The notes beneath the pieces are model-generated. The model ran no database searches. It saw only the letters and a program-made list of their open reading frames with translations, and was not told where the DNA came from. Shown piece by piece: positions 4,401-54,977 of a stretch of DNA of 64,000 nt (the first letter of the stretch is position 1; every line of letters begins with the position of its first letter). Source of the DNA: Camelus dromedarius (lineage: Eukaryota); the NCBI RefSeq assembly GCF_036321535.1, contig NC_087466.1, forward strand, positions 2,790,001 to 2,854,000. Reading direction: 5' to 3'. The translations under genes were made by a program, and so were the position numbers.

Positions 4401-7400
4401 AGAGACGTCAAGGTTGCCCGGCGCTGCCAGGTGACGCCTTTATTGCTCCTGAGGCCGAGGAGCCCACCGAGGTCCGGGCACCGTGACCCGGTTGTCCCCT
4501 GGCCCCCTAGAGCCTGTCACCGCGAGGGACCTGGTCAGCAGTTCCCCTCACAGTGAGCGCTGCCTGGGGAGAAGGCCCCAGCACGAGGCCGGCCCTAAGC
4601 ATGAGGACGGGGGTCACAGCCCCTGGGCCTGGGCGAGACCCCCTTGCCTGTGAGGTGCTTGCATCAGTGTCCCCACAAGCTCACCTGTCCGGCACATCTA
4701 CACCCCCCATAGGGAAATGGTCTGGTGAGAACTTGGTTTTCCTATCGCCTGTGTGGGTTCTGATCTGAGTTTTGTGTCTTCCTTGCAGGTGAATCACTTG
4801 CGCCCTGGGCCAGCACTCGGCCCGGGGGTGGTGGGTGGTGGTCCTGTGGCCAGGGCCCCAGGCAGAGGCCCCAGCCCCGGCTCGGCTGGCTGCCCTGGCA
4901 CTGCTGGACCCACCGATGCCGTGCTTCTCCATGAGCGTGATGAGCTCGGCCTCCGTCAGGTAGTCGGGGGGGCTTGTCTGCTTCTCCAGCATCTTGACCT
5001 CGCCCACGGCGAGGCTGTCACCCCTCTGGCAGGTGGGCAGGCTCTCCTCCAGGGGGATGCTCTGCCAGGGCATGATCTCTGTGAAGCCTGCAGAGACAGG
5101 GCGCCGCCGCTCAGGGCCTGAGAGCAGGGCTGCCCACCTGGGTCCCCCGAGGTGCCCGAGCGTCTGTGGACGGGGAGGGGCGTCCGCCTGGCCGCACCCC
5201 ACCTGGGGAGATGACGGTCTTGCCCGTGCAGGTGAAGCGCTCGGGCCCGATGCGGAAGGAGACGCTGCTCTGCAGGTACCTGCAGTCGTGGCTGACCGTG
5301 GCGATGAAGTGCCTGGTGATGTACTCGTACAGCCGCCAGGCCTCGCCCCCTGTGGTGGGCACGGCTGGTTAGCGGCCGGGCGGGGGCACCAGGAAGCCCG
5401 GCATGCCAGCACTGGCCTGCTCCAGAGCCTGAGACCGGGAGGGACCTGCTCCCACCTCCTGCCCCTGCTCCCAGGGGATCTGCTCTCCAGGGCCTGGCCT
5501 GCCCCACAAACCACCTGCCACCTTCGCTTCAGACTGGGGCTTCTGTCTCCACCGCAGCCTCGCTCCCCTGCCTCATCCTGGCACGCGGGCCACCAGCATC
5601 ACCTTGTGGCAGGGAGGTGAGGGCACCCCATGGTTGAGCCTGTCCCCTGCCCGGTCTCAACCGATCTGTCTGGCCACCTGCCTGCCCACCCACCTCACCC
5701 CACCTCCTGCAGCAGCACCCACACCTGCTTTCACACACCTGCTGCCACCACTTCACTCCTGTCCCATCCATGGAGACAGAGCACAACTTTCAGGTGGCCC
5801 CTTCATCCCAGCCGGGGCAGGGGGACCCCACACTGCCAAGGAGGCCTGATAAGGGCCAGAGGTGCCATGTCCCGAAGCCCCTCACCCCACCCTCCTTGGA
5901 AGCTCAAAGCCTGAGTGTGTGTGTGCACGTGTGTAGGAATGTGTCTGTGTGAGGGCGTGAGCATGTGTGTGGGGAGTGTGAGGGTGAGAACGTCGGAGGA
6001 GCCGCAATACCTAATTCGGCCTCTGTGGCGGATCTCATGGGGGTGATGGGGGGGTGGTCGCCAGCATCGTGGCCTTTCCGTGGGCGGTTGATGCCTTCCG
6101 CCAACAACCGCTTCACCTGCAGGGGGGACATGAGGCAGAGCTGAGTTCAGGTGCGGCTGCCCACCCACGAGGACGAGGCCCGTGGGCTGGGGCTCCAGCC
6201 TCACCGTGTCGGCCCAGTAGGGGTGGTTGGCCTGCTGCCGCAGAGGCCCCTTGAGGTCGAAGTTCTCGGGGTAGTGGGTGGTCTCGGTCCGCGGGTAGCT
6301 GATGTAGCCCTGCGTGTAGAGGCGCTCGGCCGTCTGCATGGCATGCTGCGGGCCCATGCCTGCGGAGACAGAGGCCCAGCGGCCCCAGTGCCAGGACGGC
6401 AGACGCCCGCCCCGGGCCTGGGCACTCAAGCTCCTGGGAGGCGAGCGTGGCTCTGAGCAGCTGGGGGACTGTGCCCACACAGCCTTCCCCAAGGCCAAGC
6501 TTCCCACCTCCAACAGGCACGCCTGTGTCACCCGAGATGTTGAAATGTGGCCTTCAGAAAACCTGTCTCATGCCCTGCCTGGAGCCACCCTAAGCCCTGG
6601 GCTCTGTGATGTCTGGCTAAGACAGTGGAATCTGCACATGCCCTCCGTCCTGAGCCCTCAGGGGTTTCTGTCCTCCAAATCCAGGGCCACTGATGGAGGC
6701 TCATCCCTCTGTTCCTCCCTGAGCCACAGTCTGGCCTAGCTAGCAGGTACTCGATGTCATCGCTGACCCATGAAGGTCCCCAGAGGTGCTGCTCTGACAG
6801 GACACTGCCTACGGTTTCCTGAGGCTGCAGAGGGGTCACTGGTGCCTGGGGGCCGACAGCTGTGAGAGACCAACCTTTCAGCATAACCTTCTTGCCACTG
6901 TGGAAACGAGGCTCAGAGAGGCCACGTCACACCAGTTACACTGTCCTGAGCAGGAGACACGGGCCTCAGTGCCCTGCCCACACCTGGCCTCTCCCTGCAC
7001 CAGGGACGCCAGCGCTGCCTGTCCCCCTTGGTGGCCACCTTGTCACAACTGCTATTGTTAGGATGCTCAGTTTCACACCAGGGAAACCTAAGACAGCTTA
7101 GAGAGAAGGGGACTGCGGTCGCCCATTTTCTCACGAGGAAACTGAAGCTTCAGGACAAGGAAGCAAGGGGCCTGGCTGGGATTTGTACCAATTTTTCGTT
7201 CTGGAGCTGGAACTCCACTGTTTAACGCCTTGGAGTGGGTGGCACCCAGCCAGGGACACATGAGGGCCCAGTGGCTGCTCAGACACTTAGTGACATGAAA
7301 TGGTCTGGTTTTCCCCACAATTCAAATACGCTGTTGAGTGTTAACCAACAGTCCTATGAAAGGGAATCCTCCCTGCTGTTTGTTGTCACTTGTTACTGCT

Positions 7401-10400
7401 TTGGAATTTAAGAGAAATAAAATCCACGTGATGTTCTGACTCCCTCTAAGCCTCGGGTGATGGTGCATAGTGGGGGTGCCAGCATAGGTGAGCAGGGGTG
7501 GGGGGTCCTGGCACAGGTGAGCAGGGGTGGGAAGGGTGCCAGCACAGGTGAGAGTGGGCACTGTCCTGAATTCCCAGGCGTGGTACCAGGGCTGAACAAG
7601 GTCGCCACACACCTGCCCCAAGAATTCTCCTGGGGACTTTGAAGTGATGTCCACACTTACCCAGAGAAGAGCTGGCCACACGTAGCATCTCCACGGTGTT
7701 CAGGGCCAGGGGCCTCTGCTTGGCCTTCTCTTTCCTGCTTGTGGCCTCCACCTGGGAAACAGAACAGATTCAGAGGGGCAGGAACACAAGAGGATCAGGG
7801 CGTGTGGCCAAGGGTCTGGTCTCTTCTGTTTGGTTTCCCTGCTTCTCTGATTCACTCATTTTTTAAAAAATTGCTTTATATTCAGTTTACAATGTTGTGT
7901 CAATTTCCAGCGTACAGCACAATTTTTCAGTCATACACAAACATACATGTATTAATTTCCTATTCTTTTTCACCATGAGCTACTATGAGGTCTTGAATAT
8001 ATTTATTTCCCTGTGCTGTACAGTATAAACTTGTTTATTTCGATTCACTCTTCACAGAGGTCTTAAGGCTTGAATGAAATTTGTTCAGGCCCATGAAGGG
8101 CAAAAGGAAGGAAGTTCTTTCCTAGAGAATTTTCTAGGGAAACAGAAAACCTGGAAGAACTGGGAAGGGTCAGGAAAAGGGGCCACAGACTGAAAGCCCA
8201 ACGGCAGCCAGTGCCATCTAGGCCGCAGGGATGGTAGGGCCCAGAGGCCAAGGGAAGCAGGCCCCTCGCAGGGCAGCCGTGTGCCTCGCTGCACCCACTA
8301 GTGTTGCTACACCTTCCAATTTGTCAAGAGAAGCTGGAAATTGGAACTTTTATGTGAAATATCATAACTTTTATATGTGGTAACCATTTTGAAAGTTTTG
8401 TAAACAGCACGCACTTTAAGTAAAATTGTGGTTCAACCTCTGGGCTGAATAGGTGTCAGAAGAGATGTCTGTGGCAAAAACAATCTAAACCTGTCAACTG
8501 CCACGCCTCACCCCTGCCAACCCCACACAGACCTGGCCAGGGCCATGTCCCCTGCACCCTGGGTAAACGTGGGGCTCACGCGGAAGCCAGGTGGTGCCTG
8601 TGCAGCAGTGGAGGCTGGGGTCACAAGGGGTGGGATTCGAGCATGGTGGCCGTCGAGGGGAGAAGCATGGGGCAGCTTTAGGAGAAGTTCTGGAGCCTGA
8701 GTCACCTGCAAGCTGGCCAGCAGGGCACCCAGGACTGCTTAAGAAGGACAGGGAAGGCGGCTGAAGGAGGCAGGTGTGCCTCACTGACCACAGTAGCCAA
8801 CACAATGGCAGGGCGTAAGCTGCAGCGGTCTCGGACCTGCCCCGCCCCACGCCGCCAGCTCCAACCTCATCCTAACAGCCGCGCGGCATGGGCTTCCCAC
8901 TCTTGAAACCCTGAGCAAGAAATGCAGCACATAAAGGCCACAAAAGCAGAGGCCCAGAGCTGCCCACACTAGCTGCAGGCACACAGGGCCCTCCGGCTGT
9001 CAGCTGGAGGCATCGCAGGAAAAGGACCTGTGGGAGGAATCTGCTCCAAGGAAGCAATGCCCACAGGGTGGCGGCAAGGGGAGTGTGGAGGGGCCTGGTA
9101 GGTAGCTGGCGGCGGGTTGCATCTCCTGGTCAGAGCAGGTAGGCGATGCACTAAAGCTACTGCCCAGGCACAAATATCTCAGTAGGAGCACACACATGAG
9201 TAATTGTTCTTCTTTCTAAAGGTGTCTGTTTTAGGAAGCGGCAGAAACACGTGAGCCTAGGTCAGCAGCGGCATCCCAGGGCTGCCCCTCCCAGAGGCAA
9301 GTGGACAGCTGTGCTGGAGCAGGCCCACCTGGGCTTCCTTCTCCAGCTTCGTCATGTTCAGAAACATCTGGGCGATCTCCCGGTCGAACACTCGCACTCG
9401 GTCCCAGTCCAAAAGGAGAGATCTGTCCTTATCAGTGATCACCTGCAGGATGAGGGACACAGGACAACCCGGGAGAGAAAAGGTCCAGGTGAGCCACTGC
9501 TGGGGGAGAATTGAGACAGATGGAGCTGGTCTTTGTGAGCAAAACGGTCCCGGCTCTAAAGCTCTCGCAACCATACCTGTTCAGGTGTGCAGGCACACAG
9601 GTACACAGGCTGAGACCCAGCCCCACTCCAGGTGGAGGCTGCTCTGACACCAGGACCCCTGCTGAGGCCAGGCGGCAGGATTCATGAGGCAAGCCCAAAG
9701 CCAAGGCTGATGTGTCCTTCAGGGGCATCGGAGCCCCCACCTTTCACGCGATCCCTGCACACCCACTGAGCCAGTACAGCACCAAGTGTGGTCCCAGACC
9801 CGCATCAACCAGAGCAGCTCTGAATTATGCTTTAAATCTCAGGAGAAGCTTCCATGTCATGCAGAGAAGGGGGTCTAAGACTTTTTGTTTGCTTGTTTTG
9901 TTTCATTGTTTTTTGTTTTGGGGGAGGTAATTAGATATTTATTTTGATGGAGGCACTGGGGATTGAACTCAGGACCTTGTGAGCAAAAGGCACATGCTCT
10001 ACCACTCAGCTAAACCCTCCCACCTAAAAGTCAGTGGCTCAGGGCCCTCAGTCCAGTCCTCGGGCCTGACTGCCACAGCTGTGGCCCCAACACGTGACCG
10101 CACCCCACACTGCCAAAGCTGAGATTACTCCCTCTAATCGAGATTCAACGCACCCAGGCCCAGCCTTGTCCTGCCGCCTCCATGAAGGCTGGGGCCTCCC
10201 TGGGCACCTGCGACCACTGCCTGGTGGGCCAGCTGTCCACACATGTGCCCTTGGCCTGGGGACTAAGACGACGAGGATGGGGGCTCCCAGAATCCACACC
10301 CAAGCCAGAGGGAGCCAGCGTGAACACAATGGGGCGAACCTTGGCCTGCAGCACCCAGTAGGTCTCGGGCTTGAAGGACTGGATCCTGTCATGTCTCTCC

Positions 10401-13400
10401 ACGCAGAAGCCCAGCGTGGGGGTCTGGCATGGCCCGAAGGAGATAAGCGAGCTGTCCAGGTTGCCGTATTTCCCCTGGAAGTACTTGGTCTGGAACCTGC
10501 CAGGGCGGCGGGAGAGAGGAAGACGGTTCAGTCCCGCGTTCAGTCAAGCATCATGAGCCACCGGTGGGAGGCAGGTAGGGGCTGGCTGGCGGGCGCGGGA
10601 GGCCCAAGGCAGATGCTCTGGGCTCAGAAGGCCCAGTAAGAGGACCTGCTGGGCACAGGGCCAGAGGGAGTCGTGTGTGCGCTGACAGAGCCACAGGAGA
10701 GAGCAGAGGCTGAGCGCTGGGCAGGAAGGAGAGAGCAGAGGCTATGAGCACTGGGGCAGGAGATCCTCCCATTTTACTCCAAGCACCCCCTAGACCCGCC
10801 CACTCTTCTTGTGGAGCAGGGGCCTCTGTCTGTGGTCTGCGTCAACTACAGAGGGAGTTTTCACAGGGATTTAAAAGTGGTGACACTCTCGCGTTGCTGA
10901 TTAGACAGGGCACAGACTAGGACCAGTCGAGGCAGCGGCCGGCGGGGGGCAGGGGCACCTGGTGAAGGCGCAGCCGATGCGCAGGTCCAGCTCCTGCCGC
11001 GCATCTACTGAGAGCGCCTCGTTGTGGTCGGGCTCGCCCAGGCGGGCCATAGCGTTGCAGATGTCTGTGTCGGTGATGGAGCTGAACCTGGCCCGGAACA
11101 CCGTCTTCTCGCCCCCATGGGCCCGACTCATGACCGGCAGCACAGCGTCCAGGACCTGCGGGAGGCGCCCGGCTGTAAGGCTCCGCTCTGCCCCGCCCTA
11201 ACCTGCACCGCCTGGCTCCTCCCACTCCCGCCAGACCCGCCTCCATCACCTCCCCTCCCAGAAGTCTGTCTCGCGCAGGACTCCTTTCCTTTGGGCAACA
11301 AACATGTTCCAAGTCCCACTCCTCTTGCTGCCCCCTCTCTCCCTATGGCTGCTCCCCCAACCCCCACCAACCTCCAAACCCAGAAGCATTTCTGCCAAGA
11401 ACGCAAGGGAACTCAGCCTCCAAGTCCTCCCAATTTGGACCCACTTCCCCTCCTTCTAGAGGAGGGAGTTTAGGAGGGGTGGGTCGATTTGAGACTTTTC
11501 AGAGATGGGAGGAAAGACAGAGAAGAAAAAAGAAGGAAAGGCCGTGGACGGGAGCGGGGGGCTGGGGCGGCTCAGGCCTAGAGCACAGTGGGGTCCTGGG
11601 GTCCTGGAGCCCAGACTCACTAAGAATTAGTGAAGGCCGTGCAGTGGGAGGGGAGTCACCGCTGGAGCCTGGCCACGCAGCTTCTTTACGGGGAGGAAGT
11701 GGCCTGTTTCCAAGGGGAGAAAGCCGGTGAGCTGCCACCCTTCTCCACCCCAGACGCAAAGGTCCCTGGGGAGGAGCAGCCCTGTGGGAGACGGAGGGCC
11801 TGATGGGTTTCCTGAGGGCGCCAAGCCATGGGTGAGAGTAGGGGACGGAGGCAGGAGGGGACCTGTCTGGAGTCATGGCCTGGGGTACCTGTGCAGGCAG
11901 GCAGGGAGCTCCACCTTCTCCTGGGGGAGGGCTGCCTGGGGGTGGCAGAGACAGAGGTGGTAGAAGAGGACGGAGCAGGTGGGAGGTGAGAAGAGGGAGG
12001 CGAGTGAAAGGCTGTCGGCCAGCACTGGTGGAAGGTGGGAAGGTCGCTGCCTTGAGATGGGAGGGGGGGCCACTGCGCTCAGCACCACCCTCCCCTGGAG
12101 ACAGCCCTGTTCCAGCCCCCACCTGGGAAATCCTGCTCCCTCACAATGTACCAGCAGGTGAGGGGAAGCTCTTCACCCTGAGTGGAGCCTGTGCCTCTCA
12201 AACTGTCTATAGAATCTCCAGAGCGAGGGGAGAGGCTCTGGTGCCCCGGCAGGGCTGGTGCCTCTGCGGCAGCGTGGGCCCAGGGAGGGCAGGGCAGCGG
12301 CGGGCACGCAGCCCCGGGCCTCACCTCGAAGCAGATGTTCTCCCCCTCCTTGTCGCAGTCCAGCCACAGCACAATGTAGTCACAGCCTTTGCCCTCCACC
12401 TGCGCACAGCACACGGGGACTCGCGTCTGCCTCGGCCCAGCCCCGGAGCCCTGAGCCCAGTCAGGAGGCCTGGAGCCCAGGGCAGGCCCAGGCGGGGCGG
12501 AGGAGCCGGCTACAGTCAGCTTCCTTAGGCTCTCAAGAAAGAATTTCATACACAACTGCTGCTTTTTGGACAACAAATGTTATAAGTGCCATATGATCTT
12601 AACCCCCAAAACTGCATTAAAAAAAGGCTTAGAGGAAAGAACTAAACGTAACAGTGGCTGCCTGGGGTAGTGTGACCATAAATAACTTTTTCTTCTTTCT
12701 ACTTATCTCTATTTTCCAAGTTTCCATCACATGTATGCATTTGTTTTAAAATCAGGAAACCACCACCACCAAATGCTCTACTTTAAGAGCAGGCCCTGCT
12801 CTGGGGGCTGACGGTGTTGGGGAGGAGTGGGCCCGGGGCACGTCGGGGCGAGTGGGGCGCTGGGGCCAGGACGCACCTGCAGGAACTTCACCATGTTCAG
12901 CTTGGGGTTGGCCTCCTTCTTCTCGGTCGGGGCCTGGCTGAACAGCTCGGCGGGGTCCACCTTGTCCCACTTGTTGTACCTTCCTACAGATGCGGCAAGG
13001 GGACGTCAGAGTCACACACTTCTCGGCTTCTCCCAGCCCCCTCTGCCCCACCCTCCTCCTCACAAGGACTTGGACCCAGGAGGACGGTGGGGACAGAGAG
13101 TCTCAGAGAACCACTTGCTCAGAGCAGGCCCTTCCTTGCCCTGAGCTGTGAGCCCACACCACACCTCAGCCATGTGCAGGAGTCACGCAGGCTCTGGGCA
13201 CACCCTGTCTCCTCTTCCAGCCTGGTGGTCGGCCAGCACCCGACAGGGGCTCAGCAGATCCCGGGAGCATCAGCCCCGTTTTGCCCTATGTCCGGGGCAC
13301 CCCCTACTTCTCCATGTGGGGTTTGGGGCTCATGTGCCCAGCCTTGAGGCTTCCTTCCAGGCCTCACCGGTCAGACATAGCCAAGTTCAAGTCCTGGCTC

Positions 13401-15050
13401 CCCACCTGCTTCTGCTGGTGGTAAATTTGGGGTCCAACTGCCTGGCCATACTACTTGGTGGGAGTCACAGAGCAGCAAGAACTGTCGAGGCTTCACTGTG
13501 GGTGGCCTGTGCTAAGCGTTGCCACCTCCCTGCTGCGCCCGGGCCTCAATAATCCTGAGAGGCGATGGCACTGTCCTCACAACCCTTCACACACACAGAG
13601 GCCCAGCCCCAGCAGAGCTAGGGTCATGGCCCATGTCGGACCCTCGGCAAATGCAGCCCTGCACCTAGCCCCAGCCTTGTAATAACAACCACCAAATGCC
13701 CACTGGACAAAAGCCATGTGTGGCAGGGCAGTAGCCCTCTCCCAAACACCTGAATGGGCCAGGCCCCTGCTGAGGTGGGCACCAGTGCCTCCAGTTTGCA
13801 CAGGAAGGGGCACAGGGCACACAGTGACTGAGGGGCACCACTGGACGGGGACCCATGGGTGCTGATCTGAAACCTGGTTCTGGGCACATGGCCTGGGACC
13901 CCAGGTCAGCTCTCCTCAATCCGCTGGCCACAGGACTCATGGATTCTGGACAAATCTCTCTGTCCTGGGCCCTCCCCCAGCTCCACCAGGACCCCAGGCA
14001 GCACTGTGCAATGGAGGTAGGCAGGCGGTGGGGGGCTCACCCAGGAAATCCAGGGTCATCACATGACCGCAGACGGATGTCATCTTGAAGCGGACAGGCT
14101 GGCCAGCGAAGGTCCCTGAGTACTCGTGCACCGAGCATGTCCCGTTCAGCCCTTTGCGTGAGGACATGCTCCCTGGGGAGAAGCAGGGTAATGGCCACTC
14201 CAGCAAGCTGCACCCCACAGAGCCCCGGGCAGGCCAGGGACCCCCTCCCTGCAGTGGTCAATGATGACCTCCCTTAGGCCACCGAGGGTGCTGAGAGATC
14301 TGATGGCTCCCCCTCAGCTGAACTTTCTCAGCCTCAGGGGACCAGGCACTTATGGGGGCTCCCTTCCCCCTCAGACCACGACTTCTCAGCCTGCTGCCCT
14401 GGGGTGTCCTCCGCCCTCAGCCACCAGACGCCTCTGGGTCCACAGCACCCAAACACTCTTCCTACTGAGGGAATTCAGAGGCAGGAGGGAAGCAGCTTCC
14501 TCCCAATCACCCAGGGGCCAGGGTGGGGCGAGGGCAGGCACCCTGGGGTCCCTCCAGTGACATGAGGCGCATGGCTGCAGCTGCCGGGTCCTGGACAGCA
14601 GTGCCCACAGCAGGGCCTCATTAGATCAGGCCGTGCAGGGTCTGGTCATGTCTTCCTCCTTCCAGCAGACTCTCTCTGTATGAGTTAGCAGGGCTGGTTT
14701 CTGTTGACTGTGACCGACAGCCCTGCCAGGGCCAGGGCTCGTCCAGGGGCCTGTGTGCACCTCCCTGCCGTGTGGGAGCCCCGGCCTGCTCACGCTGAGT
14801 AATCACCCCCCATGATGACCAAGTGACTAAGTGGCCGAGAGCTCTGTCCATGCCTGCTGGCCTGAACACAATCTACTCCAGTGGGCTGGGATCACCCTTC
14901 GGAAAAGAAAGAAATGCCCTGCAAGTGAACCGACCAGCTTATGGATCAAAGCTGGTGAGAGGACCGGGCTGCCCTCCTACCTCGAGAGAGGATTTTGGCG
15001 ATGGACTGGGCCAAGGATGGCTTCTCTGCCACCATGAGCACGGTCTTCAT
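1467..15050 (-). CDS. TOP3B: DNA topoisomerase III beta, 17 coding exons, 861 aa
   Basis: Coding exons with GT-AG ends: 14981-15050, 14041-14172, 12877-12983, 12325-12399, 10959-11155, 10340-10496, 9329-9442, 7661-7751, 6205-6359, 6011-6116, 5203-5349, 4914-5087, 3889-4017, 3651-3800, 3212-3312, 2457-2658, 1467-1945; total 2586 nt, in frame. Starts [22 protein letters not shown]; catalytic GYISYPRT (Tyr336); Cys-rich zinc-binding region; GR-rich tail ending [12 protein letters not shown]. Confidence 0.98.
7471..7560. repeat. ~29-bp minisatellite, 3 copies, in a TOP3B intron
   Basis: Repeated unit GGGGTGCCAGCA(C/T)AGGTGAGCAGGGGTG. Confidence 0.7.
7860..8040 (-). mobile_element. LINE-1 3'-end fragment
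   Basis: T-rich tail followed by tattcagtttacaatgttgtgtcaatttcc...ccctgtgctgtacagta, the reverse complement of a typical L1 3' UTR. Confidence 0.7.
9908..10021 (-). mobile_element. tRNA-derived SINE (Vic-1-like)
   Basis: Reverse complement of GGGAGGGT(T/A)TAGCT..GTGGTAGAGC...GTCCTGAGTTCAATCCCCAGT with CTAATTACCTCCCC tail. Confidence 0.85.
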
Positions 15051-27008: not shown

Positions 27009-27547
27009 ATGTTCTGGGCTCCTGTCCTGCTGGTGCTCCTGGCCCACTGCACAGGTGAGAACCGCCGGACCTCCCGGCTCCCCACTCCGGCCCTTCCCTT
27101 GCCCTGCTTTGCCTCAGCTGCCCACGTACTTTTGTGTCCCCAGGTTGTGGCCCTCAGCCGGTGCTGAATCAGCCACCGTCTGTGTCCTCGCCCCTCGGAA
27201 CCACCGTCCGCCTGGCCTGCACCCTAAGCGGTGACCTTGATGTCGGCATGTACAACATCTACTGGTACCAGCAGACGCCTGGCCACCCGCCACGGTTCCT
27301 GCTGAGATACTTCTCCCACTCAGACAAGAGCCAGGGCCACAAGGTCCCTCCTCGCTTCTCTGGATCCAAAGACATGGTCAAGAACACGGGCTATTTGAGC
27401 ATCTCTGAGCTTCAGCCAGAGGACGAGGCTGTGTATTACTGTGCTGTGGGGGCCCAGAGCCTGGAGCGGGAGATGGAGAGGAAGGAAGAAAGGGAGCCTG
27501 CTGCTCCGGGGCCCCTGGCACCCCAGGACACACTTACCTTGAACTGA
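27009..27547 (+). CDS. VPREB1: V-set pre-B surrogate light chain 1 (VpreB1), 149 aa
   Basis: Leader exon 27009-27054 (MFWAPVLLVLLAHCTG), exon 2 27144-27547: QPVLNQPP...LACTLSG...YWYQQTPGHPPRFLLRYFSHSDKSQG...PEDEAVYYCAVG plus acidic tail; no RSS follows. Confidence 0.97.
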
Positions 27548-30625: not shown

Positions 30626-31120
30626 ATAGTCTAGACCCCTTCCTGCTCCCCCTCCTCAGTCTCTGCCCAGGCCCTGCCCACAGGCTCAGCACCCACAGGG
30701 CCCTGGGTGGGGCCTGCCCCAAACCCAGAGCTCAGCCTCGGGGCGGGTCCCCCTGGGAATGGGCGCTTCATCGTCAAGCCCCCTCTCCCCTCCTCTCCTA
30801 TGGACTGACCCAGCCACCCTAAGTGTCCAGTGGCTCCTGGACAGACGTCCAAGGTGACCTGCTCCTGAGATAACAGGGATAAGCAGGTACCTTGGTACCA
30901 GCAGAAGCCGGGCAGGCCCTGGTGCTGGGCGTCCATGAGGACAGCAGCCGGCTCTCAGGGGTCCTTGACTGCTTCTCTGGCTCCACTCGGGGAACACGAC
31001 CTGACAGTCAGCAGTGTCTGCACAGAGGACGAGGCTATCACAGTACCTACCACAAAAGTGGAAGCAGTTTACAGTGACTCCCAGTGACACAGACAGAGAG
31101 GGACATGTGGCACAAAACTG
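30626..31120 (+). pseudogene. Ig lambda variable pseudogene, IGLV3-like, with degenerate RSS
   Basis: Leader relic ATAGTCTAGACCCCTTCCTGCTCCCCCTCCTC (ATG changed to ATA); V3-type intron; V exon from 30796 TCC TAT GGA CTG ACC CAG CCA CCC TAA (SYGLTQPP*), ...VTCS*...WYQQKPG...EDSSRLSGVLDCFSGS...EDEA, with stops and frameshifts; CCCAGTG (31080-31086) + 25 nt + ACAAAACTG. Confidence 0.88.
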
Positions 31121-32711: not shown

Positions 32712-35700
32712 ATGAGACCCAGGACAGGCCAGCTGGGCCATGACATCCCCAGGGGGCAGCACTGGCCTCTAATCCTGCTAGGCCTGGCAGTGGGTGCCCA
32801 TGGCCTGCTGCCCTCGACAGCGGCACCGCCGAACAGGGCTCCCCGCACGGAGGCCTCAGCAGAGAGCAGCCCTTGGAGCAGGTGGGACAGGTAAGGGGCC
32901 AAGTGAGTCATGGCGGGACATGAGGGTCCCTGCAGCCCAAACTGTGAGTGGGGACAGAGAGGGGCAGTGAGGGGAGAGGGGAGGAGCCGCGGGAGAGGAT
33001 GCCCCTGGGTGGGCAAACAGTAGCTTTATGTGAGTGATGACATTTTGTCCAGTGTGGGTTTGTTTGCATCCATTTTTATTTTTTCTATTGTATTAAAATA
33101 TTAGTTATCTTAATTACTGAGGTCTCTGGCACTTCTTCAACTTTGCACCCAAGCCTAGGGCCTCGCCCTCCTCGCCCTGGTCCTTGGGGCAGAGCAGAAA
33201 AGGGAGGCAGGGCAGGACATCCGCAGGGGGTGGCTGCTGTCATCCTAGGGTGCCCAAGCCTCAGGTGATGGGCCAGCTCCCTGCCCTTCCCCTCACTGGG
33301 CGGGCACTGGTCCCTGGAGCACCACACTGTGTGGTGGGGGGAAACTTCCTTGGTGTCCCCAGGTCCCTGGAGCCTGAGCCAAGGACCATCAGGCAGGGCT
33401 GTCTCCTGGGACTAGCCCCCAGGAGCCAGAGTCCACCCGGGGAGCAGATGCCTCCCTGGAAAGGCCCAGGAGAGGGTCTGTGGGGGCCACAGTCTGCCCC
33501 TCTTCCTCTGTGACCCCAGCCTCCTCCTCTCTGCCATGGAGAGTGGGTCAGCACCTGTGGGCATCAGGTCAGGCTGGCATCGCAGTGCCCTGCAGGGACT
33601 GCAGAGCAAAGGCGGGGGCCAGGAGGACATGGGGAGAGATGGACCTCCCCCATTGGGGTCAGGCCTTGTGCTGGGGCTGGGGTTCCAGAGGAATGAGATC
33701 TGGTCGCAACTCAAGGTCCATGGGAAGAGGTGGCCAGGTGACAACTACATGCAATGTGATGCCTGCAGGGCAGAGGGGCCTCCGTGAGGATGGAGTACAA
33801 GTGTGCAGATCCACCTGGGTGAGGGAGCGCAGGCACAGAGCGCTCAGGGAGCTCCCGGGGGTCTGCGTGGTGTGGGAGACCTGAGAGGAGGCAGCAGAGG
33901 TGGCCAGGCTCAGACCTGGATGAGATGTCCTGGGAGGACAGACCTCACCTGGGGAGTTCTGGGGGACTTTTGCAAGGAAACGCGACCAGACTTGGGTGGG
34001 TGGGAAATCAGAACTAGACAGACCTCGGGGTAGGGGGCCAGGTGATGTCCCAGGCAGAGTGGACAGAGAGGTGGACAGATTCAGGAGGTGGGAGGAACAG
34101 GAAAGGGAGGAGCCAGGATGTCCCCTTGGCTCTTTTGCTGGGGAATTAAGAGAACGCTGTGTCCTGCATTTTAACAAAATGGTCCAAGAGAAGCAGTGGT
34201 CTCTCCCAAGAATGTCCTCTCANNNNNNNNNNNNNNNNNNNNNNNNNNNNNNNNNNNNNNNNNNNNNNNNNNNNNNNNNNNNNNNNNNNNNNNNNNNNNN
34301 NNNNNNNNNNNNNNNNNNNNNNNNNNNNNNNNNNNNNNNNNNNNNNNNNNTGAATGGATGATGGAGGGATAATGGATAATGGATGGATGATGAATGATGG
34401 ATGGAAAGTCAGAAAGACAGTGCTCTGAGAGATCAAAGAAGGCTTCACAAAAGATGTGGAACTGAACTATGTCTCAGTGGGTGGAGACAATCGGGCAGGG
34501 TGTCCCCACATGGGAGCACAAGGAGTCAGGAATGACTTGGTGTCCACAGGCCCAGCGAGGAAACCACCTGGCTGGACTGTGGGAAATTGTGGGGCAGGAA
34601 CACTCAGAGGCCCTAAAATGAGGCCAGGAGAGGTCGGGCAGGTCCGAGCCAGCTCAGGACTCCCTCTGTCGCATCACATGGCTACCTGCCGGCACGCAGC
34701 CCTCAGCATCTCCATCAGCACTGAGGATTCAGGGGTGACCAGGACAGCCTCGGGTGGGAGACACACTGGGTGACTCCAAGGCGTGGGAGGCACCTGCCTA
34801 GGACAGGGGGCTGGGGACAGAGATGTCTCTGGGCCATGGGCTCACCCGGGGTGCTCTGGCCTCTAGGGGGCTGGCTGCTCCCTCCCCCAGCCCCAGGACA
34901 CAGCCCCCCCACTGCAGCCCTGTGCCCATCACGCCCAGCAGGTCACCATTGCAGCCCGGTCCCCGGGGGGCAGGCCCCAGGTGCTGGCCCGGCAGATTTT
35001 GGTCTGAGCCTCAGTCACTGTGGTATGTCTTCGGCAGCGGGACCCATCTCACCGTCCTAGGTAAGTGGCTCTCATGCCTTTCCCAGCCTGTCCCATCCTC
35101 TGCTGTCTTGGGAAAGTCACTTTTCCATGTCTGGGGCTGCTCCCCCTCTGCCTTCCCACCCTTAAGGATCGACCCCCATCTTTCTCCACAGGGCCAGGGG
35201 AGGGGGGCTGGGCTTGGGGTGACCAGCAGAAAGAACCCCAAGAGCAGGGGCAGCTGCCTCCAGAGTCTGACAGTCAGACATGGCCAGTCCAGAGACCGAG
35301 GCCGGTTCTGATGGGGGGCACTGGGGTGGTCTTGGGGACAGTGCCCGAGCCCTGGGGTCTGGCTGAGGGCTGGATGCCCAGCCTGGGAGGGCCACACAGG
35401 AGGTTGGGGATTGGGGGTCTGTGACCCCAGCCTCCAGGGACACAGAGGGGCAGCCCAAGGGAGGCCCTTGGAGGGTGGAGAGTGGGGTCCCGCTCACTCT
35501 GGGCTGAAGCTCTCGGGTCCCCTGCTGGGCCAGGAGGACACAGGGACGCAGAGACACGAGTGAGACAGGGCGGGGTGACCAGCAGCCTGGCGCTCCCAGG
35601 ATGGTGGCCAGAAAGGAGAGGGATCCGTGGGGCAGAGACTCCTCTGTCCCTGGATCCCTGACCCCCAGGGGCCCAGGTGTCTCCCCTGCCCACGGGTTGG

Positions 35701-36701
35701 GCTCCTGCCAGCCTCAAAGGGCGCAGTACACTCAGGAGATGACAGACAGGAAGGGAAGGGGGGCTCGGAGCTGCTCGGCTGCCCCATAAAATCAGGGTCG
35801 TAGAGTCAGGGCAGCAGGGATGGGGAGACGGGCGGAGGGGCCTGGGGCTTTGGTGGGGAGGACCCAGGCCTCGCCGGGAGAGCAGAGGCCTGGCTGGGGC
35901 AGAGCTGATGCCTGACGGGGAGGAGAGGCTCTAGGACCCACCGTGAACAAGGCTCTGGCTCGGGGCCACCCCGCACGACCTCAGGATCGTCCTGGCAGCC
36001 TGAGTGGGGAACCTAGTTCAACTAGGAGGCAACTGGGCTCTGGAAGAATGAAGTGAGATGGGGGCCTGATGCTGGGCTGAGGGCTCAGGATGTCAAGGTC
36101 AATTCCAAATTCAGACTCCAGGGCCCAGGAGGAAGGAGGGGAGCTTCCTGGTCACACACGGGGAGATGGAGGCTGCAGGTGGGACGACTCGGCTGGGTCA
36201 CCTGGAAGAGTAACATCGAAGGGCTTCTGGGGGGCTGTCTGCTTCCGAGGGCTGAGTGGGAGAGGGGACGAAGAAGGAAAACAGGGCCACCAAGTGCACC
36301 ATCACAGAGGCCGTGATGGGTAGGGGAGCCCCACCCTGTGACTCCCACCTGCATCTCACACCCTCTTCTCTGTCCACACAGGTCAGCCCAAGTCCGCACC
36401 CTTGGTCACTCTGTTCCCGCCGTCCTCTGAGGAGCTCAAAGCCAACAAGGCCACCCTGGTGTGTCTGATCAGTGACTTCTACCCGGGCAACGTGACGGTG
36501 GCCTGGAAGCAAGATGGCACCACCGTCACGCAGGGCGTGGAGACCACCAAGCCCTCGAAGCAGAGCAACAACAAGTACGCGGCCAGCAGCTACCTGACCC
36601 TGTCGCCCAGCACGTGGAAGTCTCACCGCAGCTACAGCTGTCGGGTCACGCACGAGGCGGGCACCGTGGAGAAGAGAATGGTCCCTGCAGAATGTCCTTA
36701 G
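32712..36701 (+). CDS. IGLL1: Ig lambda-like polypeptide (lambda5 surrogate light chain; IGLL1/IGLL5 type), 205 aa
   Basis: Exon 1 32712-32890 (MRPRTGQ...[14 protein letters not shown]...SRWDR), exon 2 34942-35060 ([28 protein letters not shown]), exon 3 36382-36701 ([19 protein letters not shown]...PAECP*); 618 nt in frame. Symbol chosen from adjacency to VPREB1; exon 2 is IGLL5-like. Confidence 0.9.
34995..35022 (+). other. 12-bp-spacer recombination signal sequence 5' of the J segment
   Basis: GATTTTGGT - CTGAGCCTCAGT (12 nt) - CACTGTG, immediately followed by J-lambda coding GTATGTCTTCGGCAGCGGGACC...CTAG|GTAAGT. Confidence 0.85.
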
Positions 36702-36804
36702 GTCCCTGAGCCTCCCCCACCACCCTCAGGGGGCCTGGAGCAGCAGGACCCTCCCCTCTCACCCTGGTCCACCCAGCCCTTCTCCCTGCACCCAGTCAAC
36801 TCAC

Positions 36805-36810
36805 AATAAA
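36805..36810 (+). terminator. IGLL1: IGLL1 poly(A) signal (AATAAA)
   Basis: About 100 nt after the stop codon, as in C-lambda genes. Confidence 0.8.
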
Positions 36811-38050
36811 TTGTCCTCATTGTCAATCCAAAATCGTGCTCTCTGCTCATTTTTTGCTTGTATTTAACTTGCAACCTCTCTGGGATTCTAGGGGTGGAGT
36901 GTGGGGACTCCTAGGCACCCAGTGGGAAGGTAACCCAAGGGGAGAGGCTCAAGGTCTCACTGAGGTGGGGGGAAGGGGGGAGGGGGGAGCAATTCCCAGG
37001 AAACTCTCCAGGACACATCCGCCCTCCCCTCCCTCCCACTCCTCCTCCAGCACCAGGCCCTGCCCACCCCTGTCACCTTCCTGGCTGGAGCTGCCCATGG
37101 CTGGTGACCTTCAGATAGGCCCTCTCTGCCAGCCCTGGTCCGGACCTTTTACCCCTTCCTTCATCCCACCATGTCCTTTCTTTGCAGAATGACTGACACC
37201 ATCTTGGTTCCTTACAGTTTCTCCTGTCCTTCTGCTGACCCTCCCCAGGACTGTTCTGTGCAGCGAATCACTTCTCTTTCATCAGGACCTTGTAGTTAAT
37301 AGAGATTGTTTAAAAATCATGAGGACGAGGCAGCCTCTATGCTCTGTTAGCCCCGGAACAATGACGAAAACCTTCTGTCACCTATTCCTGCTGCCCATGA
37401 CACTAGTTACCCACCCGTAAATCTTTACCTACGAGTGCACGTCCTGTTTCCGAGCACCTACCCGCAGACCCTGTTGTCCCAGGTGCCCCTCAGCGGCATG
37501 GAATGCCTCTGCAGGTGCTTCCCGATAGTGGTCTGCCCCACCCCAACCCACCCTGGGAGTCATCTGACAATAAGTTCAAACACCAGGCCCCAAATGCAAG
37601 TCCCTTTGGCTTCTGCCCCTCCCATCCCCCACAGCCTTCTCCACTGCCTCTCCTTCCCCCAACACCTTCCCCTCCAACCAGACTAAGCTGGAAGTTTACA
37701 TCCCCAAAGGCCACCTGCCTTCTGCCTCTACCCTTTTGCTATTGCTGTTCCCTTTGCTGGCAGGATATTCCTGGTCCCCGTCTGCCTGACAGTCAGCTCC
37801 CCGAAGCCCTGCCGTCCGCTCTTCCCGTGTGACCTTCCCTGACCTTGCAAGTGGGCAACGCTTGAACCACAGTTGATCTGGGCTGAGAGGAGCTGCTCCC
37901 AGGCCTCTCCTACCCGCTCCCACCTCCCCAGGGCTGCAGGAGGCAGGGCAGGGATGAGGCCTTGTGCCTGGGCCCTGGACACAGCTGCTGGCCACGGTTG
38001 CACCCCCTCAGTGCCTCAGCTGGGTACTGGGCGGCTGTCATCCAGCTCCT

Positions 38051-53875: not shown

Positions 53876-54977
53876 CTAGAATCCGTAGCCCACGGAGCAG
53901 TAATAATCTGCTTCGTCCTCTGGCTGCACGGGGCTGATGGTCAGGATGCAGGCGTTATGGGCTTTATCTGTGGCTGCTGAGAAGCGATCAGGGATGTCCG
54001 GGGGCCGGTGGTAGTCCTCCTCTGAGCGATAGTAGATGAGGTAGCGGGGGGCGCTGCCTGCCCGCTGCTGATACCAAGACACACCGTAGTCCCCGACGGT
54101 GGCGTAACGGGGGCTGAGCATGCAGGAAAGTTGGGCCACTTGGCCTGGGAAGACCAGCAGTGCCTCTGGCTGGGTCAGGGCTGGGTGGGAGACTGAGAGA
54201 CAGACACACTCAGGCCTGGCCTGGGCCCCTTCCCTCCTGCCCCACCCTACAAAGCCTTGGTCAGACTCCTGGGAGAATCCAAAAACTCACAGCCCCGTGC
54301 CACTGGATCAGCACTGGGTGGAGCACTGATTTGGCACCCCCTCAGCCCCCATTAGTGCCATGTTCACAAGGATCTATGTTCAGTTAAGGACCTAGAGTTC
54401 AGAGAGTGGGACTGGTGGCCTCTGTGTTCTTCTGCTGCCCTCCCTCATCCCTTACCCTGCTGACCCCTAAAACTTTGGTTACACTGGCTCTTCCAAACCC
54501 TGGCTACAGACTGACCACCCCCAGAGAGGCTCTTGGGCTGTTACTACCCATTAGCTGAGCCTCAGGCCACTGGCCCTTCGGGACTTTCTCAGTGTTAGTG
54601 TGTCCTGAGGTTCTGTCGGGACCAGATCACACCAGTTTCCCCTCTGTATAACCCAAAAGGTGACTAGTCTCTGAGACCCCAGAGAGTCAGTGTCAAAGGG
54701 ACCCTAGCAATCTGGTCATGCACAAATGGGGAAACCGAGGCCCACGCAGAAGAGTGACCTGCCTAAGGTCTATGGCAGAGCCATCTGCAGTTTATCTTCC
54801 CCCACCTCAATGTCCCTTCCAGAACCCTCCCCACTGCCCATAGCAATTTGCTTCCATTCAAGGGCTTTCTGGAACCCATGCTGTGTCCCACCCCACCCCC
54901 AGGTGAGCCGGGCCCAGGGAGGGCTCACCTGCCAGGAGGGCCCCAGCTAGGAGGAGAGCCAGACGACAGCAGACCAT
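53876..54977 (-). CDS. VPREB3: V-set pre-B surrogate light chain 3 (VpreB3), 121 aa
   Basis: Leader exon 54929-54977 (MVCCRLALLLAGALLA), exon 2 53876-54192: LLVFPGQVAQLSC...DYGVSWYQQRAGSAPRYLIYYRSEED...DRFSAA...PEDEADYYCSVGYGF*. Confidence 0.96.

What the first reader, a model, noticed from the sequence alone, without database searches (positions are those of the whole stretch)
34995..35060. lambda5 exon 2 carries a J segment with an apparently functional 12-RSS that also encodes protein
Seen: nonamer GATTTTGGT (the critical A-tract is intact on the other strand), an exact 12-nt spacer and a perfect CACTGTG heptamer abut an in-frame J ([12 protein letters not shown]) with a GTAAGT donor to an intact C exon. 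The same bases encode RFWSEPQSL of lambda5. Knowledge (recalled): this is nearly the human IGLJ1 RSS inside IGLL5, whereas human IGLL1 and mouse Igll1 have degenerate RSSs and do not rearrange. Inference: the gene could act both as germline lambda5 and as a RAG-competent J-C cassette, or the RSS is kept only by coding constraint.
Basis: partly seen in the sequence, partly recalled or inferred. Interest (0 to 1): 0.78.

Follow-up and report, generated by a model that had tools for sequence, protein, structure and literature searches.

The report
Camel lambda5 keeps an intact RSS
The dromedary's surrogate-light-chain gene lambda5 still carries a textbook V(D)J recombination signal inside its protein-coding second exon, next to an intact J segment; this ancestral feature is also kept in a lemur and a vole and has been known since 1991 from human Ig-lambda-1/IGLL5, and nothing found here shows that camels actually rearrange it.

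Summary
At 34995-35022 lie a nonamer (GATTTTGGT), an exact 12-nt spacer and a consensus heptamer (CACTGTG). They abut an in-frame J (35023-35060) with a GTAAGT donor, spliced to an intact C exon. The same bases are read as [10 protein letters not shown].

The gene is the dromedary lambda5 (IGLL1/IGLL5 co-orthologue). It has three exons giving an intact 204-aa ORF with the GPRC motif, in the order TOP3B, VPREB1, pseudo-V, lambda5, VPREB3.

By sequence, the signal is as good as those of conventional camel IGLJ segments. It is the only such site in the 64 kb.

It is not camel-specific. Lemur catta (identical spacer) and a bank vole keep the same intact signal. The dual-use idea was published for human Ig-lambda-1 in 1991.

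Coding constraint can explain its retention, since only 17 of 84 possible substitutions in it are synonymous.

No deposited camelid V-J-C protein uses this J-C. The nearest verified IGLV segments lie 1.3 Mb away on the opposite strand, so only inversional joining could work.

One RNA-seq run does hold the lambda5-specific 3' UTR.

The scan's earlier notes on this stretch are all from this same window; none comes from other DNA.

The parts
32712..32890 (+). lambda5 exon 1 (ATG, signal peptide, start of the unique tail). It ends in phase 2 before GTAAGG.
   Evidence: The peptide is identical to the published camel lambda5 (PMC9614664 Table_2).
34942..35060 (+). lambda5 exon 2 (acceptor cccagcAG|G). 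It carries the rest of the unique tail with the GPRC motif, the translated RSS and the J-like segment.
   Evidence: Spliced to exons 1 and 3 it gives an intact 615-nt CDS (204 aa).
34995..35003 (+). RSS nonamer GATTTTGGT (canonical strand ACCAAAATC, 7/9). It is read as (R)FW(S).
35004..35015 (+). 12-nt spacer CTGAGCCTCAGT, read as SEPQ(S). It is identical in Lemur catta.
35016..35022 (+). RSS heptamer CACTGTG (canonical CACAGTG, 7/7), read as (S)L(W).
35023..35060 (+). J coding segment [12 protein letters not shown](G) with the F-G-X-G motif, followed by the donor GTAAGT at 35061-35066.
   Evidence: It differs by one residue from a conventional dromedary J ([12 protein letters not shown] in P0033).
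36382..36698 (+). lambda5 exon 3: C-lambda-type C1-set domain ending ...KRMVPAECP plus the stop codon.
36440..36675 (+). Core of the C exon, 99.1% identical to conventional camel IGLC exons (gene-conversion tract). The exon's ends are diverged.
36676..36850 (+). lambda5-specific 3' end of the CDS and the 3' UTR (AATAAA at 36805). It is about 85% like conventional IGLC 3' ends.
   Evidence: Its 31-mers are held by RNA-seq run X1 at 0.86.
27009..27547 (+). VPREB1 (leader exon from 27009; V exon about 27146-27547), 5.2 kb upstream of lambda5 exon 1.
   Evidence: P0124 and P0002 are 99-100% identical camel VPREB1 proteins.
30780..31100 (+). Orphan V-lambda pseudogene with in-frame stops and a broken signal heptamer (CCCAGTG). 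It is not a usable 23-RSS partner.
53879..54286 (-). VPREB3 V-type exon (VFPGQ motif).
   Evidence: The motif criterion comes from PMC9614664.
1470..14257 (-). TOP3B exons, head-to-head with VPREB1.
   Evidence: One search matches PDB TOP3B chains at E=5e-33.

Best explanation
This is the dromedary surrogate-light-chain gene lambda5 (co-orthologue of human IGLL1 and IGLL5). Its exon 2 is an ancestral 'J-lambda-1-type' segment taken over together with its 12-RSS, and the RSS is now translated as part of the lambda5 tail ([10 protein letters not shown]). In Camelus the signal has simply not decayed, because almost every change in it would alter a conserved peptide and because the whole RSS-J block evolves very slowly. 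By sequence the signal should be bound and cut by RAG if it is paired with a 23-RSS (inferred). No partner lies nearby, and the gene sits 1.3 Mb from the only IGLV segments located, on the opposite strand. Its working role is therefore the germline-encoded lambda5 chain that pairs with VpreB (inferred from family membership). Any V-J use would be rare or absent.
For: Gene identity: three exons give an intact 204-aa ORF. Exons 1-2 are identical to the published camel lambda5 and carry its GPRC motif. The order TOP3B(-), VPREB1(+), lambda5(+), VPREB3(-) is the typical cetartiodactyl layout. There is only one J-C cassette in the 64 kb.
Ancestral state: the same intact signal occurs in Lemur catta (GGTTTTGGT / identical spacer / CACTGTG) and in a bank vole. 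FW...S.W is widespread in about 36 eutherian lambda5 proteins.
Coding constraint: only 2/27 nonamer, 7/21 heptamer and 8/36 spacer substitutions are synonymous. The nonamer A-core sits in the Phe codon, and two of the three critical heptamer bases sit in the Trp codon.
Against use as a light chain: all 20+ camelid V-J-C proteins carry the conventional C end (TVSPSQC). KRMVPAECP occurs only in lambda5 models. No 23-RSS-like site lies in the window, and the pseudo-V heptamer is broken. In CamDro3, IGLV segments with good 23-RSSs lie at 21.90 Mb on the + strand and VPREB1/lambda5 at 23.22 Mb on the - strand.
Against: The signal is as good as those of conventional camel J-lambda segments, whose nonamers match 9/9, 8/9 and 7/9. 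It also fits the experimentally derived CACNRYR rule. lambda5 chromatin is open exactly when RAG is expressed (general knowledge), so some cleavage is plausible. The opposite orientation does allow productive inversional joining. The lambda5-specific 3' UTR is held at 0.86 by an RNA-seq run labelled as reproductive-tract material, where pre-B cells are not expected. Between camel and lemur there are 0 synonymous differences over 16.3 synonymous sites of the RSS-J block, against pS of 0.32 (VPREB1) and 0.23 (C exon). That gives P about 0.002-0.014, post hoc, so something beyond the protein code constrains the block.
Confidence: 0.6

Rival explanations
1. True dual use. Besides encoding lambda5, this J-C is a working extra IGLJ-IGLC cassette. 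RAG pairs its 12-RSS with IGLV 23-RSSs and, by an inversion of about 1 Mb, makes V-J(lambda5)-C(lambda5) light chains in a fraction of camel B cells.
For: All sequence criteria for a functional J are met: RSS, F-G-X-G, donor and intact C with the inter-chain Cys. The signal quality lies within the range of conventional camel J signals and fits CACNRYR. V and J lie in opposite orientation in cis, the geometry in which inversion gives a chromosomal V-J-C. The lambda5-specific 3' UTR is present in peripheral-tissue RNA. The human precedent is Ig-lambda-1/IGLL5.
Against: No V-containing camelid protein carries this C end. The distance is 1.3 Mb to the IGLV segments located, across about 26 non-Ig genes by the synteny paper. 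The nonamer is non-consensus; in an assay, cryptic nonamers with two or more changes fell to 22% and 1% activity. The 3' UTR signal is equally explained by germline J-C transcripts; the NCBI model P0001 starts in intron 1 and reads through the RSS.
Confidence: 0.17
2. The signal is kept fresh by gene conversion. A conventional J1-type cassette, whose RSS is under selection for RAG function, repeatedly overwrites lambda5 exon 2, as has clearly happened to the C exon.
For: The C exon core is 99.1% identical to conventional IGLC while its ends are 85-95% identical. Intron 2 is 91.7% identical to a conventional J-C intron. The dromedary has a conventional J that differs from the lambda5 J by one residue (P0033). 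Synonymous divergence in the RSS-J block is zero between camel and lemur.
Against: Homology with the best-matching conventional cassette stops at 35150, downstream of the J. The three conventional camel J signals that could be read have different spacers and nonamers. The spacer is identical in camel and lemur, which fits slow evolution of one orthologous block better than independent conversions. The donor J1-type segment could not be fetched.
Confidence: 0.12
3. The signal is a regulated RAG target that permanently switches lambda5 off, cutting exon 1 and the promoter away from J-C once light-chain rearrangement starts, in the manner of the kappa-deleting element.
For: Only indirect evidence exists: an intact signal in three distant lineages and unexpected synonymous conservation.
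Against: No 23-RSS partner lies in the 64 kb. Most mammals have replaced the Leu codon of the heptamer, and human IGLL1 and mouse have lost the signal altogether while lambda5 is still silenced normally (and general knowledge).
Confidence: 0.03

Closest known systems
Human Ig-lambda-1 / IGLL5 (IGLJ1-IGLC1 with an upstream 14.1-like exon 1; Evans & Hollis, J Exp Med 1991, PMC2118775)
   Same: Both have a three-exon lambda5-type gene whose exon 2 is a J segment with a working-type 12-RSS and whose exon 3 is a C-lambda exon. In both, one transcript comes from the germline gene and a second is proposed after V-J joining. From my recall of the IGLL5 protein, the RSS-encoded peptide is nearly the same (FWSEPQSL-).
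   Different: The human gene is the first cassette of the J-C cluster, directly downstream of the V cluster in the same orientation, and its J is a proven rearranging segment. The camel gene stands alone beside VPREB1 and TOP3B, 1.3 Mb from the IGLV segments located and inverted relative to them. Its rearrangement is unproven.
Human IGLL1 (14.1) and mouse Igll1 (lambda5)
   Same: Same gene family, exon plan and GPRC motif. In mouse and most non-primates the gene also shares the VPREB1/TOP3B neighbourhood.
   Different: Their exon-2 peptides (human ...HNSVTH-VFGSG, mouse ...KPQFW-YVFGGG) cannot encode CACTGTG, so the signal is degenerate. The camel signal is intact.
Conventional camel IGLJ-IGLC cassettes (C. 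ferus scaffold KB016347, locus L003)
   Same: The signal architecture is homologous: nonamer, 12-nt spacer with a GAGCCT/GAGGCT core, then CACTGTG. They also share a J with F-G-X-G, a donor and a C exon. The C exon core is 99% identical.
   Different: Conventional cassettes have no lambda5 exon 1 and no open frame through the RSS into an upstream coding exon. Their C ends read TVSPSQC, they are tandemly clustered 3-4 kb apart, and they are the ones seen in V-J-C models.
lambda5-type exon 2 of Lemur catta (L011) and bank vole (L010)
   Same: Both have an intact 12-RSS in the same reading frame: GGTTTTGGT, a 12-nt spacer and CACTGTG, then (W)YVFG.GT. The lemur spacer is identical to the camel's.
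   Different: Their nonamer is one step closer to consensus (8/9). The vole gene lies 3.6 kb upstream of a conventional J, an IGLL5-like layout. The lemur gene lies 18 kb downstream of VPREB1, as in the camel.

Membership tests
lambda5 / IGLL1 surrogate light chain gene | Three exons: signal peptide plus unique region; unique region plus J-like; C-lambda-like. They splice to one open frame without rearrangement. | tested here: met
   Exons 32712-32890, 34942-35060 and 36382-36698 have compatible phases and give 204 aa.
lambda5 / IGLL1 surrogate light chain gene | GPRC motif about 30 residues before the C region (criterion of PMC9614664). | tested here: met
   ...[12 protein letters not shown].... 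Exons 1-2 are identical to the paper's camel lambda5.
lambda5 / IGLL1 surrogate light chain gene | Synteny: next to VPREB1, with TOP3B on the far side of VPREB1. | tested here: met
   TOP3B 1.5-14.3 kb (-), VPREB1 27.0-27.5 kb (+), lambda5 32.7-36.7 kb (+), VPREB3 53.9-54.3 kb (-).
lambda5 / IGLL1 surrogate light chain gene | Expressed from the unrearranged gene in pro/pre-B cells and pairs with VpreB and mu heavy chain. | not testable with these tools
   No bone-marrow reads could be laid.
Functional IGLJ gene segment (IMGT-type criteria) | 12-RSS with a CAC-initiated heptamer, a 12 (+/-1) nt spacer and an A-rich nonamer. | tested here: met
   7/7 heptamer, 12 nt spacer, 7/9 nonamer with A4-A7. 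This lies within the range of conventional camel J signals and fits CACNRYR. A formal RIC score was not computable here.
Functional IGLJ gene segment (IMGT-type criteria) | In-frame F-G-X-G motif and a donor splice site to an intact C exon. | tested here: met
   FGSG, GTAAGT and a C1-set exon.
Functional IGLJ gene segment (IMGT-type criteria) | Found joined to V segments in rearranged DNA or transcripts. | tested here: inconclusive
   No V-J-C protein with this J-C appears among 1369 hits; the best 120 were inspected, and a perfect match would rank among them.
Functional IGLJ gene segment (IMGT-type criteria) | Lies in cis with V segments in a geometry that allows a chromosomal coding joint. 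| tested here: met
   Met only through inversion. IGLV with 23-RSSs lie at 21.90 Mb (+) and VPREB1/lambda5 at 23.22 Mb (-) of CM016658.2. The 1.3 Mb distance makes efficiency doubtful.
IGLL5-type dual-use gene (human Ig-lambda-1) | A lambda5-type exon 1 upstream of a J-C whose RSS is intact. | tested here: met
IGLL5-type dual-use gene (human Ig-lambda-1) | The J-C is the first cassette of the rearranging J-C cluster. | tested here: not met
   The window holds a single J-C, with none within 29 kb downstream or 35 kb upstream.

The most novel reading that the evidence does not exclude
Camels use their VPREB1-linked lambda5 J-C both as the surrogate light chain and, through megabase-scale inversional V-J joining, as a genuine extra lambda light-chain cassette. 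That would explain the lambda5-specific 3' UTR seen in peripheral-tissue RNA. More broadly, an intact, synonymously frozen RSS inside lambda5 in camel, lemur and vole would then be a maintained RAG target rather than a relic.
Probability: 0.15. Interest if true: 0.75.

Novelty: new member of a known kind. Interest (0 to 1): 0.4.

Why it matters
It shows at nucleotide level what lambda5 came from. The gene is a J1-type J-C cassette whose recombination signal was absorbed into the reading frame. That state survives intact in at least three distant eutherian lineages, even where the gene has left the J-C cluster.

A consensus-grade RSS in one of the most actively transcribed genes of RAG-expressing pro-B cells is also a potential hazard, so camels offer a natural test of how such sites are tolerated.

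There is a practical warning too. The lambda5 J differs by one residue from a conventional camel J, and its C exon core is 99% identical to IGLC. Camelid light-chain repertoire pipelines can therefore mis-assign reads between the two.

Tried and rejected
- **Protein search with the exon-2 peptide.** It found only camel models, so orthologues had to be reached through VPREB1 neighbours.
- **Neighbour loci.** The bat (L002), Eulemur (L008) and dolphin (L009) loci did not reach a lambda5 exon 2 within 10 kb of VPREB1.
- **Other look-ups.** P0036 was not on record. P0051's gene was too long to return DNA or coordinates.
- **Full-text search for the J and C peptides.** It found nothing.
- **Inference withdrawn: orientation.** I first inferred from an annotated gene range that the IGL locus has the same orientation as lambda5, which would put coding joints on an excised circle. 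Searches showed the opposite orientation.
- **Inference softened: Leu-to-Pro changes.** I first read the frequent Leu-to-Pro change in other species as decay of the heptamer. One search shows heptamer position 4 is not read by RAG, so a CCG codon (CACGGTG) could stay active. Those codons could not be fetched.
- **VPREB1-lambda5 fusion proteins.** I rejected them as evidence of rearrangement because most keep RSS-encoded residues.
- **RIC scoring.** It was not possible, since the model is not available offline.
Full report
**What is in the sequence**

One search shows, on the + strand:
- nonamer GATTTTGGT (34995-35003)
- a 12-nt spacer, CTGAGCCTCAGT (35004-35015)
- heptamer CACTGTG (35016-35022)
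- a J coding segment (35023-35060) reading [12 protein letters not shown] plus the first base of a Gly codon
- the donor GTAAGT (35061-35066)

On the canonical strand the signal reads CACAGTG / 12 nt / ACCAAAATC. That is a perfect heptamer and a nonamer with two mismatches, at positions 3 and 8, which leaves the A run at positions 4-7 intact.

The same bases are read in frame as [10 protein letters not shown].

A scan of both strands of the window for a signal of this quality finds only this site. Expectation was 0.0 in 200 shuffles.

**The gene**

Exon 1 (32712-32890) opens with MRPRTGQ..., has a hydrophobic leader, and ends in phase 2 at a GTAAGG donor. Exon 2 starts at 34942 after cccagcAG. 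Exon 3 (36382-36698) is a C1-set domain (Pfam E=1.6e-32). Spliced together they give an intact 615-nt CDS of 204 residues.

Exons 1 and 2 are identical to the camel lambda5 listed in the supplement of PMC9614664. They contain the GPRC motif that paper uses to define lambda5.

The surroundings match the typical cetartiodactyl layout described in the same paper:

| Feature | Position | Strand |
|---|---|---|
| TOP3B | 1.5-14.3 kb | - |
| VPREB1 | 27.0-27.5 kb | + |
| dead V-lambda | about 30.8-31.1 kb | + |
| lambda5 | 32.7-36.7 kb | + |
| VPREB3 | 53.9-54.3 kb | - |

Only one J-C cassette exists in the 64 kb.

The only database proteins with the exon-2 peptide are Camelus models named IGLL1 or IGLL5.

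**How good is the signal**

Three conventional J-lambda segments of C. ferus (locus L003) all have CACTGTG and 12-nt spacers. Their nonamers are GGTTTTTGT, GGTTTATGT and GGTTTCTGA, matching the consensus at 9/9, 8/9 and 7/9. Their spacers are visibly homologous to the one here. The lambda5 signal (7/9) lies inside that range.

A high-throughput recombination study (PMC9723617) finds the effective heptamer rule to be CACNRYR. It also finds that the first spacer bases matter, and that cryptic nonamers with two or more changes retain 22% to 1% of activity. The camel signal fits CACNRYR. Its spacer starts AC, the same start as the best conventional camel J.

I infer that RAG would cut it if it synapsed with a 23-RSS, perhaps less efficiently than a consensus nonamer. 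A formal RIC score could not be computed here.

**Is it special to camels**

No. Loci fetched through annotated VPREB1-lambda5 models show the same intact signal in the same frame:
- Lemur catta: GGTTTTGGT, the identical 12-nt spacer, CACTGTG.
- Bank vole: GGTTTTGGT, TTGAATCTCAGT, CACTGTG.
- C. ferus: identical to the window.

Among about 36 eutherian lambda5 proteins:
- The F-W pair, which encodes the nonamer core, and the Trp before the J, which encodes the critical end of the heptamer, are widespread.
- The Leu codon in the middle of the heptamer is often Pro, Ser, Ala or Arg.
- Human IGLL1 and mouse Igll1 have lost the signal altogether.

The dual-use concept itself was published in 1991 for human Ig-lambda-1, now IGLL5/IGLJ1-IGLC1. 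The camel gene is therefore a new member of a known kind. One difference is that it stands apart from the J-C cluster.

**Why the signal persists**

Only 17 of the 84 possible single-base changes in the 28 nt are synonymous: 2/27 in the nonamer, 8/36 in the spacer and 7/21 in the heptamer. The nonamer A-core is the Phe codon. Two of the three critical heptamer bases lie in the Trp codon. Purifying selection on the peptide is thus enough to keep most of the signal.

Something more is present, however. From the nonamer core to the end of J, camel and lemur show no synonymous difference in 16.3 synonymous sites. The synonymous proportion is 0.32 in VPREB1 and 0.23 in the C exon of the same loci, giving P of about 0.002-0.014. 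This test is post hoc on small numbers, and most of the signal comes from the J part. The conserved block runs from 34976 to about 35075, across the donor, while the first third of exon 2 and the introns are diverged.

Splicing constraint, general J-segment conservation, gene conversion and RAG function are all compatible with this. I cannot separate them.

**Is it used for V-J joining**

Evidence against, or not supporting:
- A search with J+C returned 20+ camelid V-J-C models. All carry the conventional C end (TVSPSQC). KRMVPAECP occurs only in lambda5 models.
- The window contains no 23-RSS-like site. The nearby pseudo-V has CCCAGTG in place of the heptamer.
- In CamDro3, two IGLV segments with good 23-RSSs lie at 21.90 Mb on the + strand, and VPREB1 lies at 23.22 Mb on the - strand. 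Any V-J joint would need an inversion of about 1.3 Mb to those segments. By the synteny paper, that span crosses a block of about 26 non-Ig genes.

Evidence keeping the question open:
- Opposite orientation is exactly the geometry in which inversion gives a chromosomal V-J-C.
- The lambda5-specific 3' end and UTR (36676-36850) are only about 85% like conventional IGLC 3' ends. One RNA-seq run labelled 'reproductive system metagenome' holds 0.86 of their sampled words. Germline J-C transcripts could explain that equally well. The NCBI model P0001 starts in intron 1 and reads through the RSS, and human IGLL5 is transcribed in mature B-lineage cells (PMC10912717, seen).

The decisive step, laying reads, failed.

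**Verdict**

The J, RSS and C are structurally complete and the signal is plausibly RAG-competent. However, the feature is ancestral, shared with other lineages, largely explained by coding constraint, and conceptually known since 1991.
- Actual rearrangement is unproven and, given the geometry and the databases, probably rare or absent. I put it at about 0.15-0.2.

**Limits**

- Stretches written N were not filled or looked up.
Local scripts read only the stored window file.
- The human IGLL5 peptide is recalled from memory, not checked with a tool.

Noticed in passing
window 36440-36675 (against L003:10064-10298 and 13987-14221): The core of the lambda5 C exon is 99.1% identical (233/235) to conventional C. 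ferus IGLC exons. The first 58 nt are 93-95% identical, and the last 23 coding nt plus the 3' UTR are about 85% identical with indels. This is a clear gene-conversion tract between lambda5 and IGLC.
   Followed up: partly
window 35150-36675 (against L003:3413-4930): Intron 2 of lambda5 is 91.7% identical over 1526 nt to the J-C intron of a conventional-cluster cassette. That cassette's C begins GHQEGAPSV and it has no J at the homologous place. Homology stops abruptly at 35150.
   Followed up: partly
window 36676-36850; run X1: An RNA-seq run labelled 'reproductive system metagenome' holds 0.86 of the sampled 31-mers of the lambda5-specific 3' end and UTR. Two runs of unknown type hold 0.64. 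Expression outside bone marrow is unexpected for lambda5, and the form of the transcript is unknown.
   Followed up: partly
proteins P0003, P0147, P0199, P0204, P0207, P0221, P0227: Public annotations of camel, dolphin, goat, buffalo, deer, cattle and lemur contain models that fuse the VPREB1 V exon to the lambda5 J-C. Most keep residues encoded by the RSS region, so they look like model artefacts or cryptic splices rather than RAG joints.
   Followed up: partly
window 30780-31100: An orphan V-lambda pseudogene lies between VPREB1 and lambda5. It has three in-frame stops and has lost the YYC motif. Its signal heptamer is CCCAGTG, followed by a spacer of about 23 nt and an A-rich nonamer remnant.
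   Followed up: partly
L010:3000-6800 (bank vole): A lambda5-type exon 2 with an intact RSS lies 3.6 kb upstream of a conventional J (WVFGGGTKLTVL) that has its own 12-RSS. This is the human IGLL5-like layout rather than the isolated camel layout.
   Followed up: no
window 1470-14257 (- strand) and 53879-54286 (- strand): TOP3B exons lie head-to-head with VPREB1. The VPREB3 V-type exon, with its VFPGQ motif, lies 17 kb downstream of lambda5.
   Followed up: yes
window 36382-36698 against P0001 and P0003: The window's lambda5 C exon differs from the CamDro3 protein model at three residues (V/M, PS/LL) and from the C. ferus model at four. At those positions the window agrees with conventional IGLC, so conversion-tract alleles may be segregating.
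   Followed up: no
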